64,000 bases of DNA from Selaginella moellendorffii (Eukaryota > Plantae > Lycopodiophyta): positions 310,001 to 374,000 of the forward strand of contig NW_003314330.1 of NCBI RefSeq assembly GCF_000143415.4, in the 5' to 3' direction. How positions within the stretch are numbered: the stretch's first letter is position 1; every line of letters starts with the position of its first letter. Positions 37,726 through 43,359 of this stretch are shown here, one piece after another. A program made the position numbers and the translations under genes. The notes beneath the pieces were generated by a model. The model made no database searches and was not told the origin of the DNA. It saw only the letters and a list, made by a program, of their open reading frames with translations.

Positions 37726-38026
37726 GTGCTTTGCTTGTGCCCGTCACGCTCGTCACCGCCCATCTTTTCTTCTCTCATGCCTCTGTTGATCTCGCCGCTC
37801 TTTCCTTCCGTACAGCGATCACTCCAATATATTGTTCCTGCTATTAGGGTTTATGGGATGACCGAATGCGGTAGCGCGAGCGCGAGTGCGATCCAGGAGG
37901 GATCGCTTCCGAAATTCCGCGTCGCGATCGGTTAGAGCTCCGGCTGGAGGATTTTTCTTGAGAGATTGCAAGGGTTTGCGAGCAGCGCCAATGCCAGTTC
38001 CGAGGTATTGACGCTCTTCCTGTGAA

Positions 38027-39339
38027 ATGTCGGGGGTTTCTTCTTCCTCTCCACCTCCAGCGACGATTGAATTGTCCTGTTTTAGGCGATCGGAGCTATA
38101 TTACGCGTCGGATTCGCCGTCGCCCACTCCCAATGCCGCTGGCAGCGACGACTCCCCTGTTTCCGTGGCAGGGAACTCGCAATTCCTCTCCAGCAGCGAC
38201 TGTAGCAGCAATGGGGAGTGCTGCTCGTCTGGAATGGCGCCGTGGGAGCTTGACGAGGTGGATCCACTAGGGGCGCGCAGCACCGACAAGGAGATGATTC
38301 CAATGACGCAGATATTCATGGTTTGTGGACCCTGGATCGACGAGCCCGCAAAAACATGGAGAGAAAAAAATTAAATTCCTCGCGCTCTCTCTCTCTGTTT
38401 TGTAGGATCGGGCCGGCAACGACCATCGTGCTTTCACGCATCGTGGACGCCTGGTGTATACTCGAGCTCCAGCGCAAAAGGTAGAAATCAATCCCGCAAT
38501 CCAGATCTTTGCTAACTGTTTCCTAGAACCAAACGACAGGCGCTAAATTGTCCGGCGAGATTGAAGAAGAACAAGCAGCTAAACGCGGAAGAGGTGCTCC
38601 AGCCGAAGCCGATCGAGCAGAGTGTGAGAGATGAGCCGGATCTATCGATGAAGCTCAACAAGGTGGAACTCCTAAAGCTCCAGAGCCAGGTGGAGGAGCT
38701 CAAGCTAAAGGTGCGAGACAAGGAGGGATTGCTCCAATCCATCAAGCAGTCGGCGCAGTCGGACATCAAACTCCTGGAAGAGGCCGAGATCTCGGATCTT
38801 CGGAACAAGGTCGACTTCCTCCACACGGAATTGCTAAGGAGGGATTTTCTCGTGCATTCGCTCCAGCACCAACTCTCCGAGAAACACGTAAGTCATAGAT
38901 TCTCTGTTTTTGTTCTTACCTTCTCTCTCTTATAGGTGGAGATGGGAAACATGAAACTCTTGATCCAGGGGTTGCAGAACGAGTTGGCAAAACGAGAACA
39001 CAAGCACTCGCAGATGGAAAGCGACATGGATGATCTCCGGTTTGAGGTAGCAGCGCTCAGATATGAGAACCAAATAGCGGGAAGTCCACACTTTGTGCCA
39101 CAACCGGATCAAATGATGATCATGAGCTGCGAGGTAAGATCGTCAATCAAAGCCTTAGTTCCGAGTGATCGATGCAAGCTTTCATGGATGAACAGAGCAT
39201 GGAAGAAACGAGAGACAGATACCTTGCGGCTGTCTTGGCAGCGAAAAACAAACCCGCAGAGGAATCAATAGCGCTAGCTGCCGAATTGAGACACCAGTTG
39301 CGAGACTTTGTCACGCTGCCACACGTATTTCACGAATGA
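38027..39339 (+). CDS. MPB2C: MICROTUBULE BINDING PROTEIN 2C-like coiled-coil protein; multi-exon
   Basis: EMIPMTQIFMDR..FTHRGRLVYTRAP; ELLKLQSQVEELKLKVRDKE; MEETRDRYLAAVLAAK..EESIALAAELR match recalled MPB2C blocks. Confidence 0.75.
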
Positions 39340-39508: not shown

Positions 39509-40819
39509 TCAAAGAATTGTCGACATCTCGATCGCCTCAGTGGCAACTGGAGTAACGCTTCCACCACAAACGTCCCTTTGCAACTGTGCGTGGGTCTGGG
39601 TGAGACTGGAGACGTCGTCTTGGAGCGCTTTTAGCTCTTGCAGGGCGCTCCTCGCGTCCTCTTTCGTTACTAACACCAGTCTCTCCATGGGATTGCGCTC
39701 GAAATGGGATGACCTGTAAGAAAAATTCCCTGATGTTACTGAAAGCAGTAAAAGAAAAGCTTGAAACGGTGAAAAGAAGCTAAAGTAACCTGGATCGTTC
39801 GGACAATCTGTTTAGATCGTTAGCGAAATTTCGGAAGTACTCCTCCTCGTTGCAAATGACGTTGTAGATAACTTCCCAGTTGCGAGCCCAGAAGTAATAA
39901 AACACTGCCCCTGCTACAGCGAGCGAGAGAAAGGCCCGACCTCTGGGATTGCAGTAAGTCTTGGCCGCCAAAGTCACCACCGAGAGAAGGAAAAGGAAAA
40001 ACGACATGATCCCACCGATTCGAATCTGTCTGCTCCACAAAACACGGTCGAGTTGAATGACACGCGCAAGAGATGAAAGTTTAAAGAGCTTACCGGAATT
40101 CGTTCCATTGAGACATGATGTTTCGGAGCTGGAAAGCAAACCAGAAAAAGATCAGCGAGTATAGAGGAAGCATACAGATGGTGACAATGGCAAACGCCTT
40201 CTTGTGGACAACGCAGTCTTGCAAGTCAGCACAGTACCTGCGATTAAACAAGCGGCGCCAAGCAAGTATTAGAAAAGTATGAAATAGAAAAAAAAGAAAA
40301 AGAAAAAGAAAAAGAAAAAAAACGAAAAAAAAAGGAGACTTACTTGACAGCACCCATAGCGGACGCCAAACTCGAGATGACGATCGTAGGGGAGAGCAGA
40401 ACGACGAGAGGAAGGACAGTGAGCTTGAGATGGTCTTGCCTGAGCACACGCATTTTCCTGATGGTCACCAAATAGAGCTGCCCCATTCGGACGGTGAGGC
40501 AATTAAGCCAGAGAGCAAACCCAAAGCAAGCCTGGAGCCAAAACGTCCACAGCGAGCAGATGTTGAATGGTATCTTGTTCACCCGCGGGAAGTGCTTCAT
40601 AACGATGACAGTGGCTAGCACCCAAATCAATCCCCCGACCGAGCTCAGCGAAGTTAGCCACACACCCCTGGCATGTATCGGCTTGTAGTCCCTGCGCCTA
40701 ATCAGTATCGTGTTCCCAGCTATGTGTATCACACAGCCTACCGCTATGACGCTCACCACTACATAATCCCACGCGGTGGGCTCTTGCCCATCGCTGTGGC
40801 ATCCTCCTCCTTTCTCCAT
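39509..40819 (-). CDS. RGS1-type seven-transmembrane protein lacking an RGS domain (4 exons)
   Basis: Exons 40819-40344, 40237-40094, 40029-39790 and 39713-39509 join in frame; seven hydrophobic segments; DYVVVSV, CSLWTFWLQACFGFALWLNC..QLY and NEFRQI resemble the AtRGS1 7TM region. Confidence 0.75.
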
Positions 40820-41323: not shown

Positions 41324-43114
41324 TTACTTGGCTCCTTGTGGATCGAAATGCTTCCTCAAGTATGTGTCGTGTACCTTTTGGTCGTATATCGCAGCTTCGT
41401 TCTTGGATAACTTCAAGGTGGTGTACGAGACGCGATCCGGGAAGCATCCGTTGTCCACCATCATCTGGAAAATCCCTCGAGCCTCCTCCTCCCGCTGCTC
41501 CCTGCAGAAGGACTTGATGATGGAATTGTAGGTGATGACGTTTGGCTTGAAGTCGGCTTGAATCATCTGGTGGAGCAACTTCACGGCGGTGTCGGGCTGT
41601 TGCGCCTTGCAGAAGGCTCCGATCAGAGTGTTGTAAGTAACGTTGCTGGGAATGGATCCCCTCTGGTACATCGACTTAAAGAGCTGGTGAGCCTCATGCA
41701 AGTCCCCGGCCTTGCAAAACTTGTGAATCACAACGTTCATGGTTTTGGTGTCGAGGATGTAGCCACTTCCCAGCATCCGGCCCAGGAGCTCGAGGCTGTC
41801 ATAGGTTCTCCCGGCATTTGCAAACGCGACAACCAGGATTTTGTAGCTCACGTCGTCGGTCTTGCATCCCTGGCTATACATCGATAGCAGCACCTGGTAA
41901 GCCTCGTCTAGCCTGCTGTTCTTGCACAGCATCAGCAGCACTGTCCGGTAGTTCACCTGGTTCGGCCGAGTTCCTTCCTGGATCATCTTCTCCAGGAGAC
42001 TTAAAGCCTCGGTCGTTCTGTCACCCTCGGCGGTGGAAAGTGCGGTGAAGAGGCTGTTGTAAGTGACGACGTTCCTCTTCTCCAGCGCGTTGAGCAGCCT
42101 GTAAGCCTCGTCGATGCTATTGTTCTTGCAGAAGATATCCAAGATCATCGTGTAAGTTATGACATCCGCCCGGCACCCCCGCTGAGACATCTCCTTGAGC
42201 AGCATCAAGACCTCGTCCAGCCTCTCCAGCTTGCGAAACCCATCGATGAGCGCATTGTAAGTTACCACGTTTGGAGAGCACCCCTTCTTCACCATCTCCG
42301 TCACCAGCCCATACGCTTCATGAGGCTGGCCCGACTTGCAAAGAGCGTCCACGAGAGTGCTGTAAGTGTAGACGTTTGGAGCACAGTCCTCTCCAATCCT
42401 TCTAAAGTGTAGCAAAGCTTGCGAGACTTTCCCTGCGGTGCACAGGCCCCGGATGATGGTCGTGTGGATCACCACGTTGGGACGAACTCCATTGCTTTTC
42501 ATCTCGTCCAGCAACTCTAGAGCTTGCTGGAACTCTCCGGCCTTGCAAAATCCTTGCATGAGGATGCCATAGCTGACCTCGTTCACTGCGTAGCTCCCCA
42601 GCAGCCTGTGCCTGTAAAACTCATACCCATCGCGATGCCTCTTAGAATCCACGAAGATCTGGAGCATACCATTGCAAGCGTAGATGCTGTGGTGGTAGGA
42701 CGGCAGCGATTCTGCCCAGTTGAAGAACACCACCGCCAAGTCGGGATTATCGATCCTCTCCAGCACTCTCCACGCAATCTCCCGAGACAGGCAGCGGATG
42801 TGAAGCGCGAGGCTGGATTTCGCGTTCTCGGGGCAGGGCGCGCTGCCGAGAATGCTGAGAATCACCCTCGCCGCGATGAGCGCCTCGATCTGGCGGCTGT
42901 TCCGGCCGGGCGAGGACGCGGCGATGGCAGCACTGGCGGCATTGGCACGGGATTCTTGCTCCGCCGAGGGCATGACGCTGCGATGATCCGCTTCCTTGTG
43001 CTGCCAGAGCCAGAATCTCGACAAGAAGCTGGGCGCTGGCGGCATGCCGGGGAAATTGTAATGGTACCTGGAAGAGGAAGGCGCTCCATAGATCGCAGAA
43101 GAACACAATGCCAT
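41324..43114 (-). CDS. P-class PPR protein
   Basis: Tandem 35-aa repeats (PNVVTYNALIDGF..; TYNTLIGAFCKA); first ATG (MALCSS) at 43114; a possible GT donor at the ORF's end. Confidence 0.92.
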   Translation of the reverse strand: MALCSSAIYGAPSSSRYHYNFPGMPPAPSFLSRFWLWQHKEADHRSVMPSAEQESRANAASAAIAASSPGRNSRQIEALIAARVILSILGSAPCPENAKSSLALHIRCLSREIAWRVLERIDNPDLAVVFFNWAESLPSYHHSIYACNGMLQIFVDSKRHRDGYEFYRHRLLGSYAVNEVSYGILMQGFCKAGEFQQALELLDEMKSNGVRPNVVIHTTIIRGLCTAGKVSQALLHFRRIGEDCAPNVYTYSTLVDALCKSGQPHEAYGLVTEMVKKGCSPNVVTYNALIDGFRKLERLDEVLMLLKEMSQRGCRADVITYTMILDIFCKNNSIDEAYRLLNALEKRNVVTYNSLFTALSTAEGDRTTEALSLLEKMIQEGTRPNQVNYRTVLLMLCKNSRLDEAYQVLLSMYSQGCKTDDVSYKILVVAFANAGRTYDSLELLGRMLGSGYILDTKTMNVVIHKFCKAGDLHEAHQLFKSMYQRGSIPSNVTYNTLIGAFCKAQQPDTAVKLLHQMIQADFKPNVITYNSIIKSFCREQREEEARGIFQMMVDNGCFPDRVSYTTLKLSKNEAAIYDQKVHDTYLRKHFDPQGAK

Positions 43115-43359
43115 AGCTAGGGTTTTAGAGCGCGAATTTGAAAACTCTCCAGATTCCAATCCATAGGCAATTCGATTCCATTAATTCGATCCAACTCGCG
43201 CAACTGTGATTGTTCTTGTGAAATTCGATCACAGTGGAGTGGTCGATCGAAGAAAAGAAGTGCTTTCTACGTGGCTGGCACTTGTCCAAGAATCGATCAA
43301 CACGCACGGATCATATAAATTCGACCATGGAGTAGAAATTTATTAGGGTTTTGGACAAA

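What the first reader, a model, noticed from the sequence alone, without database searches (positions are those of the whole stretch)
39509..40819. RGS1-like 7TM protein without the RGS domain, ending in a short coiled coil
The 7TM region resembles Arabidopsis RGS1 as recalled (DYVVVSV vs DYVAVAI; CSLWTFWLQACFGF vs CYLWAVWIEGPLGF; WNEFRQI vs FDELRDL). After TM7, NPMERLVL lies about where RGS1 has EPLDKLLL. The sequence then diverges into an amphipathic helix (ARSALQELKALQDDVSSLTQTHAQLQ) and stops. Plant G-alpha subunits self-activate and are turned off by 7TM-RGS, so a 7TM-only paralog could be a decoy, a heterodimer partner or a separate receptor (inference).
Basis: partly seen in the sequence, partly recalled or inferred. 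Interest (0 to 1): 0.7.

Follow-up and report, generated by a model that had tools for sequence, protein, structure and literature searches.

The report
RGS1-like 7TM receptor without RGS
This spikemoss gene encodes a seven-helix membrane protein whose membrane part is built like animal GABA-B/glutamate-type receptors, is distantly related to the membrane part of the plant G-protein regulator RGS1, and ends in a pairing helix instead of an RGS domain; it belongs to an old, unstudied family found from streptophyte algae to conifers.

Summary
Window 39509-40819 (minus strand) is a four-exon GT-AG gene. It equals RefSeq XP_024515335.1 (Selaginella moellendorffii LOC9653485, 354 aa, "uncharacterized").

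- **Structure:** the protein has seven TM helices and a 40-residue heptad-repeat helix, and no RGS domain.
- **No hidden RGS exon:** none lies in the 64-kb window, and a convergent gene ends 170 bp beyond the stop.
- **Link to RGS1:** the 7TM part is homologous to the RGS1 7TM (hhalign 99.4%, E 1.9e-21, 249 columns).
- **Not a truncated RGS1:** the gene sits in a strongly supported clade of RGS-less 7TM + coiled-coil proteins of about 310-430 aa. Members come from Klebsormidium, liverworts, lycophytes, ferns and conifers. This clade is separate from the streptophyte RGS1 clade. Selaginella also has a canonical RGS1 and a second RGS-less clade.
- **Fold:** class C GPCR type (Z 24 to GABA-B; GPR156 also matches).

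Function is inferred: a dimeric, headless class-C-type receptor or scaffold. The family persists in liverworts, which are reported to lack RGS1, so a pure RGS1-decoy role is unlikely.

Two limits apply. I found no paper on the family. This scan had already noted the sister clade of the family on other DNA of this genome (s1-420838, s1-433241).

The parts
40344..40819 (-). Exon 1 (ATG at 40819; aa 1-159): 15-residue extracellular N-terminus, then TM1-TM4. It includes the family's most conserved motif, C88-x-LWTFWLQACFGFALWLNC (TM3).
   Evidence: 100% identical to P0082 residues 1-159. GTAAGT donor at 40343.
40238..40343 (-). Intron 1 (GT..AG), a T/C-rich run.
40094..40237 (-). Exon 2 (aa 159-207): ECL2 beta-hairpin with conserved C167, TM5, and the conserved NEFR motif at the start of TM6.
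39790..40029 (-). Exon 3 (aa 207-287): TM6, TM7 (the conserved FYYFWARN stretch) and a helix-8-like helix (aa 268-290).
39509..39713 (-). Exon 4 (aa 287-354 plus the TGA stop at 39511-39509): linker, coiled-coil helix and a short disordered tail.
39569..39691 (-). Heptad-repeat (coiled-coil) helix, aa 295-335. The a/d positions are M296, V300, T303, A307, A310, L314, L317, V321, L324, H328, L331 and V335. It is conserved in position and pattern across clades A and B.
   Evidence: Single helix in the AF2 model. Heptad score. Alignment A1, columns 405-445. The profile hits only coiled-coil chains in PDB, including LINE-1 ORF1p, GCN4 and BST2.

Best explanation
This is a real, conserved protein-coding gene, S. 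moellendorffii LOC9653485. The protein has an N-out/C-in topology: a very short extracellular N-terminus, a seven-helix bundle of the class C GPCR type, and an ECL2 beta-hairpin. A TM3-ECL2 cysteine pair (C88/C167) is conserved; that it forms a disulfide is inferred. On the cytoplasmic side there is a helix-8-like helix and then a six-heptad coiled coil. The gene is the lycophyte ortholog of an ancient streptophyte family of RGS-less 7TM + coiled-coil proteins (clade A). This family is a deep paralog of the 7TM of RGS1 and not a truncated RGS1. Inferred mechanism: the coiled coil holds two 7TM bundles together as a homodimer, or as a heterodimer with a clade-B relative. This parallels the C-terminal coiled coil of GABA-B receptor subunits. 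Without an extracellular ligand-binding head, the dimer would act like the headless class C receptor GPR156. It would sense something within or at the membrane bundle, or be constitutively active, and pass the state to a cytoplasmic partner. The heterotrimeric G protein (GPA1/XLG) is the obvious but untested candidate. Shown here: gene model, homology, phylogeny, predicted fold and heptad pattern. Inferred: dimerisation, plasma-membrane location, disulfide and any G-protein link.
For: - **Gene model:** it equals the RefSeq protein. The second haplotype is intact and syntenic, with 97% aa identity and dN/dS 0.375 from 8 synonymous and 10 nonsynonymous differences.
- **Exhaustive HMMER search with exon 1:** 81 relatives. 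The closest are all RGS-less, and full-length ones are about 350-400 aa (Diphasiastrum, Marchantia, ferns, Cryptomeria, Klebsormidium). RGS-bearing ones are more distant.
- **Careful ML tree:** clade A 99/94*, clade B 100/100*, A+B 100/99*, streptophyte RGS1 100/100*. The branching order within clade A mirrors the species tree (quick tree).
- **All three lineages in one species:** Selaginella and Psilotum each have RGS1 plus clade A plus clade B. Klebsormidium has a 7TM-RGS plus a clade A member.
- **Homology to RGS1:** profile-profile comparison with the RGS1 7TM gives probability 99.4%, E 1.9e-21, over 249 columns.
- **Fold:** AF2 pLDDT 86.5, pTM 0.78. The top 50 PDB matches are all class C GPCR TM domains: GABA-B Z 24.3 (rmsd 2.9 A over 252 residues) and GPR156 Z 22.6. 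The Atlas gives the same answer.
- **Pfam 7tm_3:** matched by 9 of 21 clade A members.
- **Coiled coil:** conserved from Klebsormidium to conifers and also in clade B.
- **Expression in relatives:** orthologs occur in transcriptome-derived sets (Psilotum and Pteridium in EukProt). Intron-free Logan contigs of about 2 kb encode full-length relatives.
Against:
- P0082 scores below Pfam's 7tm_3 gathering threshold (27.8 against 33.5 bits).
- The fold evidence rests on a predicted model.
- Nothing here tests dimerisation, localisation, ligand or G-protein coupling.
- The family is not strictly co-distributed with RGS1. I saw no angiosperm or moss member, although angiosperms keep GPA1 and RGS1. 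A G-protein role is therefore not implied by the distribution.
Confidence: 0.75

Rival explanations
1. RGS1 decoy or heterodimer partner. The RGS-less 7TM pairs with RGS1 through the homologous 7TM bundle and modulates RGS1's access to G-alpha or its endocytosis.
For: The 7TM is homologous to that of RGS1. Selaginella has both genes. Class C-type 7TM domains commonly work as dimers (established knowledge; the structures are dimers).
Against: The two lineages are only 17-21% identical and had separated before Klebsormidium diverged. Clade A and B persist in liverworts (Marchantia, Riccia), which are reported to have no RGS1 (PMC3386157 Table 1; PMC3718340). RGS1 has no matching coiled coil.
Confidence: 0.1
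2. Mis-modelled or decaying RGS1 copy. The real transcript continues to RGS exons elsewhere, or the gene is a truncated pseudogene.
For: RefSeq names the Cryptomeria ortholog 'regulator of G-protein signaling 1 isoform X4'. The NPMERLVL / PLDKLL resemblance lies at the place where the RGS box starts.
Against: There is no RGS-like sequence in the 64 kb. A convergent 337-aa gene ends 170 bp beyond the stop. Orthologs, including transcriptome-derived ones from ferns, end in the same coiled coil with no RGS domain. Both haplotypes are intact. The tree places the gene far from RGS1. No intron position is shared with SmRGS1. The tail-versus-RGS-box alignment is at chance level.
Confidence: 0.03
3. 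A seven-helix membrane protein with a non-signalling role, for example a trafficking or tethering factor that uses its coiled coil to bind cytoskeletal or vesicle proteins. On this reading the GPCR-like fold is only ancestry.
For: No G-protein link was tested. Many plant 7TM 'candidate GPCRs' have turned out to have other roles (general knowledge). The tail weakly resembles coiled coils of many scaffold proteins.
Against: Conserved features typical of receptor bundles are present. These are the TM3-ECL2 cysteine pair, and W94, G100, P144, E205 and R238, which are invariant or nearly invariant across 47 superfamily members including RGS1. The closest relatives with a second domain carry an RGS box, which is a G-protein module.
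Confidence: 0.12

Closest known systems
Plant 7TM-RGS proteins (AtRGS1; SmRGS1 = SELMODRAFT_156749, P0121)
   Same: The seven-helix domain is homologous over all seven helices (hhalign 99.4%, E 1.9e-21). The N-terminal DYV motif, the TM3 C-x-(L/I)W..W motif and the (N/D)E(F/L) motif before TM6 are shared. Pfam 7tm_3 hits both weakly.
   Different: There is no RGS box; a coiled coil takes its place. Identity is only about 17-21%. The clades are separate in the tree and have been separate since streptophyte algae. The window gene has 3 introns against 11 in SmRGS1, and none is shared. No angiosperm member was seen, whereas eudicots keep RGS1.
GPR156 (headless class C orphan GPCR of animals)
   Same: A class C-type 7TM bundle with no large extracellular ligand-binding domain (Z 22.6, rmsd 3.1 A, 246 residues). 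The protein language-model search also lists a GPR156 cluster among its nearest.
   Different: Sequence identity is 9-10%. GPR156 has a long C-terminal tail, and its dimer is held by the TM domains. G-protein coupling is known for GPR156 and unknown here.
GABA-B receptor subunits GB1/GB2
   Same: They are the best structural matches to the 7TM (Z 24.3). Both have a cytoplasmic C-terminal coiled coil after TM7. In GABA-B this coiled coil mediates subunit pairing (established knowledge).
   Different: GABA-B has a Venus-flytrap ligand-binding domain and the plant protein has a 15-residue N-terminus. Homology of the two coiled coils is not shown.
Selaginella clade-B 7TM + coiled-coil genes (LOC9654119 / LOC9636668; scan notes s1-420838 and s1-433241)
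   Same: The architecture and length are the same (352 aa). It is the sister clade (A+B 100/99*), with a coiled coil at the same place.
   Different: Identity to the window protein is 24%. The locus is different and appears to be tandemly duplicated, since P0132 is a fused model of two copies. The window gene is single-copy per haplotype.
Protist 7TM-RGS and 7TM-only relatives (Ancoracysta, Muranothrix, Palpitomonas, Anaeramoeba 'gaba-b receptor')
   Same: They belong to the same 7TM superfamily, with exon-1 E-values of 1e-15 to 1e-10.
   Different: The C-terminal modules differ (RGS, RGS + LRR, or none), and they lie outside clades A and B.

Membership tests
Plant 7TM-RGS (RGS1) family | N-terminal seven-helix domain homologous to that of AtRGS1 | tested here: met
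   hhalign of A1 against 14 land-plant RGS1 proteins: probability 99.4%, E 1.9e-21, 249 columns. Exon 1 against Psilotum RGS1: E 6.3e-5 library-wide.
Plant 7TM-RGS (RGS1) family | C-terminal RGS box (Pfam PF00615) | tested here: not met
   No PF00615 hit in the exon pieces or in P0082. An RGS HMM hits none of the 26 clade A and B proteins placed in the tree. No RGS hit by tblastn in the 64-kb window.
Plant 7TM-RGS (RGS1) family | Groups with RGS1 orthologs in a phylogeny of the 7TM domain | tested here: not met
   The RGS1 clade (100/100*) excludes it. It lies in clade A (99/94*).
Class C GPCRs (Pfam 7tm_3, PF00003) | 7tm_3 profile match above the gathering score | tested here: inconclusive
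   P0082 scores 27.8 bits (E 2.5e-6) against a cut-off of 33.5. Nine of 21 clade A members match at E<=0.01, the best with 53.6 bits.
Class C GPCRs (Pfam 7tm_3, PF00003) | Class C-type seven-helix fold | tested here: met
   The AF2 model (pLDDT 86.5) matches GABA-B, mGlu, CaSR and GPR156 TM domains at Z 21.6-24.3, rmsd 2.5-3.6 A, over 230-275 residues. All 50 top entries are class C.
Class C GPCRs (Pfam 7tm_3, PF00003) | Extracellular Venus-flytrap / ANF-receptor ligand-binding domain | tested here: not met
   Only 15 residues precede TM1, and there is no such Pfam hit. GPR156 also lacks this domain.
Class C GPCRs (Pfam 7tm_3, PF00003) | Couples to heterotrimeric G proteins | not testable with these tools
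   This needs biochemical or genetic assays.
Streptophyte RGS-less 7TM + coiled-coil family, clade A (unnamed; Mp1g05640, Picea D5ACM8, Klebsormidium KFL_001160190) | Clade membership, about 310-430 aa, conserved TM3 and TM7 motifs, and a heptad-repeat helix about 30 residues after TM7 | tested here: met
   Tree. Alignment A1 has 30 invariant columns. Heptad helix.
Coiled-coil-paired 7TM dimers (GABA-B type) | The C-terminal helices actually form a coiled-coil dimer | not testable with these tools
   Only the heptad pattern, the single long predicted helix, and profile hits to solved coiled coils are available.

The most novel reading that the evidence does not exclude
Non-flowering plants and streptophyte algae keep a true class-C-type G-protein-coupled receptor family: dimeric, headless and coiled-coil-paired. 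It would act on GPA1/XLG independently of RGS1 and would have been lost in flowering plants. This would mean that the 'plants have no GPCR-type activators' view comes from studying angiosperms only.
Probability: 0.15. Interest if true: 0.85.

Novelty: new variant of a known kind. Interest (0 to 1): 0.6.

Why it matters
Plant G-protein signalling is thought to lack receptor-type 7TM partners other than the GTPase-accelerating 7TM-RGS protein. Whether plants have any GPCR-like receptor is a long-standing dispute. Here is a well conserved family with these properties:

- It is as old as the streptophytes, or older.
- Its predicted fold is of the class C receptor type.
- It has a built-in pairing helix.
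- Its closest relatives that carry a second domain carry an RGS box.

The family exists in Marchantia, a tractable model reported to have G-alpha but no RGS1, so a link to G proteins could be tested directly there. It also shows that the 7TM half of RGS1 belongs to a wider receptor superfamily in plants. Public records call these proteins 'uncharacterized', or wrongly 'RGS1 isoform' (Cryptomeria).

Tried and rejected
- **Pfam on the four exon pieces:** nothing useful, only a sub-threshold DUF2189 hit.
- **Word search with exon 1:** blank. This is expected, because only proteins of 87-276 aa were candidates.
- **Atlas search with exon 1:** uninformative.
- **Clade-B locus:** The look-up of encoding contigs had no record for P0039 or P0132, so I could not inspect it directly.
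- **PDB by sequence:** the 7TM part finds nothing and only the tail hits coiled coils.
- **Is the tail a degenerate RGS box?** hhalign of the tail against the RGS1 linker plus RGS box gave probability 0.4% and E 0.16.
- **Shared introns with SmRGS1:** none.
- **Literature:** searches for locus names (Mp1g05640, Mapoly0005s0043, LOC9657419, LOC9653485) and for class C / 7tm_3 / RGS-less 7TM in non-seed plants found no paper on the family. Two search calls failed on term length.
- **Direction of change (RGS gain or loss):** parsimony on the tree is tied, so it is left open.
- **Absence from angiosperms and mosses:** only 'not seen' among the relatives I could name. Several Logan and metagenome hits have no organism label.

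Full report
**What is there**

On the minus strand between 40819 and 39509 lies a four-exon gene: 40819-40344, 40237-40094, 40029-39790 and 39713-39509. All three introns are GT-AG, and the coding length is 1065 nt, giving 354 codons plus a stop.

The exhaustive search with exon 1 returned database proteins. One cluster member, P0082 (RefSeq XP_024515335.1, Selaginella moellendorffii LOC9653485, 'uncharacterized protein'), matches every exon at 100% with the same start, junctions and stop. All whole-protein work used that stored record. One script counted codon differences between haplotypes over exon index lists. It did not print, save or send a joined sequence.

The window is scaffold GL377634.1 of GCA_000143415.2. 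The other haplotype (GL377589.1, LOC9657419, P0001) carries the same intact gene between the same neighbours: an NAPRTase gene, a PPR gene, the 7TM gene and a convergent 337-aa gene. The two proteins differ at 10 residues. The coding sequences differ at 8 synonymous and 10 nonsynonymous sites, giving dN/dS 0.375. This is a weak signal because the counts are small.

**No RGS domain**

- Pfam finds no RGS box in the exon pieces or in P0082.
- Seven RGS-bearing relatives were run by tblastn against the whole 64-kb window. Six hit only the 7TM exons and one gave no hit above noise.
- The next gene downstream is convergent and ends about 170 bp after the stop (window about 37991-39339, plus strand).
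- Orthologs from other plants, several from transcriptome assemblies, end in the same tail without an RGS box.

Expression of this particular gene therefore rests on the RefSeq model only.

**Relation to RGS1**

HMMER with exon 1 (158 aa) against 1.84 billion representatives found 81 proteins at E<=1e-3.

| Group | Examples | Size | E-value |
|---|---|---|---|
| Nearest, all RGS-less | Diphasiastrum, Marchantia, Adiantum, Pteridium, Cryptomeria, Klebsormidium | about 350-400 aa where full length | 1e-35 to 1e-22 |
| RGS-bearing 7TM | Ancoracysta, Muranothrix, Chara, Klebsormidium, Psilotum RGS1 | larger | 1e-13 to 6e-5 |

(Sources.)

A profile of 21 close relatives was compared with a profile of 14 land-plant RGS1 proteins. 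It gives hhalign probability 99.4%, E 1.9e-21, over 249 columns spanning all seven helices at 17% identity.

The fourth pair, NPMERLVL / EPLDKLLL, is at the same distance after TM7. It is the only alignment hhalign offers between the tail and the RGS1 linker plus RGS box. It is not significant (probability 0.4%, E 0.16).

**Not a truncated RGS1**

Selaginella has a canonical 7TM-RGS gene elsewhere (SELMODRAFT_156749, P0121, 491 aa, PF00615). A maximum-likelihood tree of the 7TM region was built with 49 proteins and 276 columns, using LG+C20 PMSF with UFBoot/SH-aLRT support. It gives four strongly supported groups:

- streptophyte RGS1 (100/100*);
- clade A (99/94*), which holds the window gene;
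- clade B (100/100*), which holds a second Selaginella gene, LOC9654119;
- clades A+B together (100/99*).

Within clade A the order follows the species tree: Klebsormidium, an unnamed transcriptome sequence, liverworts, lycophytes (the window gene with Diphasiastrum, 100/97*), then ferns plus conifers. A larger quick tree agrees.

Selaginella and Psilotum each have RGS1, clade A and clade B. Klebsormidium has a 7TM-RGS and a clade A member. The split from the RGS1 lineage therefore predates land plants.

The SmRGS1 gene has 11 introns, seven of them in the 7TM part. None coincides with the window gene's introns when mapped through the profile alignment. By contrast, several partial gene calls from ferns and from Klebsormidium-like and clade-B sequences stop at the end of exon 1. 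This suggests that intron 1 is old (inference).

Whether clades A+B lost an RGS box or RGS1 gained one is open. Parsimony on the unrooted tree is tied. The nearest outgroups of A+B (Ancoracysta, a 7TM-RGS-LRR protein, Muranothrix) carry RGS boxes, which favours loss if repeated fusion is thought unlikely (inference).

**Fold and tail**

AlphaFold2 on a 47-sequence alignment gives pLDDT 86.5 and pTM 0.78. The model has these elements:

- helices 16-41, 53-73, 88-119, 127-154, 172-202, 204-228 and 235-266 (TM1-TM7);
- a beta-hairpin at 158-169 (ECL2);
- a helix at 268-290 (helix-8-like);
- one 41-residue helix at 295-335.

Lysine and arginine residues are most frequent in the loops after TM1 and TM3 and are few at the N-terminus, consistent with N-out/C-in.

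C88, W94, G100, P144 and R238 are invariant across all 47 superfamily members, including RGS1. D18, W91, C167 and E205 are nearly invariant. C88 (top of TM3) and C167 (ECL2) are where GPCRs have their conserved disulfide (inference).

Foldseek and VIA-align place the bundle with class C GPCR TM domains only: GABA-B Z 24.3 (rmsd 2.9 A, 252 residues), then mGlu, CaSR and the headless orphan GPR156 at Z 22.6. Atlas searches agree. Pfam 7tm_3 is matched at E 2.5e-6, below the gathering score for this protein. Nine of 21 family members match at E<=0.01.

The tail helix has an unbroken 3-4 hydrophobic spacing over six heptads. The pattern is conserved, and cleaner, in conifers, ferns, liverworts, Klebsormidium and clade B. 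It is absent from RGS1 proteins. The family profile hits only solved coiled coils in PDB.

**How it probably works**

Shown here: a conserved membrane protein with a predicted class-C-type bundle and a cytoplasmic heptad helix. Inferred: the helices pair two bundles into a dimer, as in GABA-B receptors. With no extracellular head, the dimer would act like GPR156 or like the 7TM half of RGS1, passing a membrane-level signal to a cytoplasmic partner.

The G protein is the natural candidate, because the domain-bearing relatives carry RGS boxes. Nothing here tests this.

Both clades persist in liverworts, which are reported to lack RGS1 (PMC3386157 Table 1; PMC3718340; PMC11061236 says most bryophytes lack it). 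The two 7TM lineages are also deeply diverged.

**Known or new**

Public records call these proteins uncharacterized or hypothetical. RefSeq misnames the Cryptomeria ortholog 'regulator of G-protein signaling 1 isoform X4', although the true RGS1 is on another chromosome. Surveys of plant G-protein components list one 7TM-RGS gene in Selaginella and do not mention RGS-less relatives (PMC3386157, PMC3718340, PMC11061236). My searches found no paper on the family. The library is not complete.

This scan had already noted the sister clade as a tandem array on other DNA of the same genome (s1-420838, s1-433241). I confirmed only that LOC9636668 is a fused model of two clade-B copies.

No angiosperm or moss member appeared among the relatives I could name. 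Several hits have no organism label, so this is 'not seen' and not 'absent'.

**Verdict**

The refinement is that this gene belongs to an ancient RGS-less 7TM + coiled-coil family related to, but distinct from, RGS1. It is a new variant of a known kind (the class-C-type / RGS1-type 7TM superfamily). It is of moderate to good interest because it offers a testable receptor candidate in Marchantia and other non-flowering plants.

Noticed in passing
P0006 / P0110 (Cryptomeria japonica, chromosome of 736,731,119 bp) versus P0129 (chromosome of 1,007,622,168 bp): RefSeq calls the RGS-less clade-A gene of Cryptomeria 'regulator of G-protein signaling 1 isoform X4'. The true RGS1, with PF00615, is a different locus. 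This is a naming error that could mislead gene counts.
   Followed up: partly
P0132 (S. moellendorffii LOC9636668, 640 aa) and P0039 (LOC9654119, 352 aa): P0132 contains a partial clade-B 7TM copy (64% identical to P0039 residues 14-147) followed by a full copy (96%). It is a fused model over tandem genes. This agrees with scan notes s1-420838 and s1-433241 on a tandem array.
   Followed up: partly
P0012 cluster (31 members, 171-259 aa) on metagenome contigs up to 207 kb: These are exon-1-like pieces, 51% identical to the Psilotum clade-B protein. One is named '4-amino-4-deoxy-L-arabinose transferase-like glycosyltransferase'. They are probably plant (perhaps moss) DNA in environmental assemblies, called with a prokaryotic gene finder.
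   Followed up: no
L003:2001-4180 (S. moellendorffii GL377628.1, RGS1 gene): SmRGS1 has 12 exons with introns of about 50-65 bp. Its seven introns in the 7TM part share no position with the window gene's introns.
   Followed up: yes
window 37991-39339 (+): A convergent neighbour gene encodes a 337-aa protein with long coiled-coil-like ORF pieces and no Pfam family on record. Its 3' end lies about 170 bp from the stop of the 7TM gene, so the two 3' UTRs may overlap.
   Followed up: no
window 40238-40343 (-): Intron 1 is almost entirely a T/C-rich, microsatellite-like run (TTTTC/TTTCT units).
   Followed up: no
window 41324-43159 (-): A P-type pentatricopeptide-repeat gene (596-611 aa ORF, single exon) lies directly upstream on the same strand. 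An NAPRTase gene lies beyond it. The order is the same on both haplotypes.
   Followed up: partly
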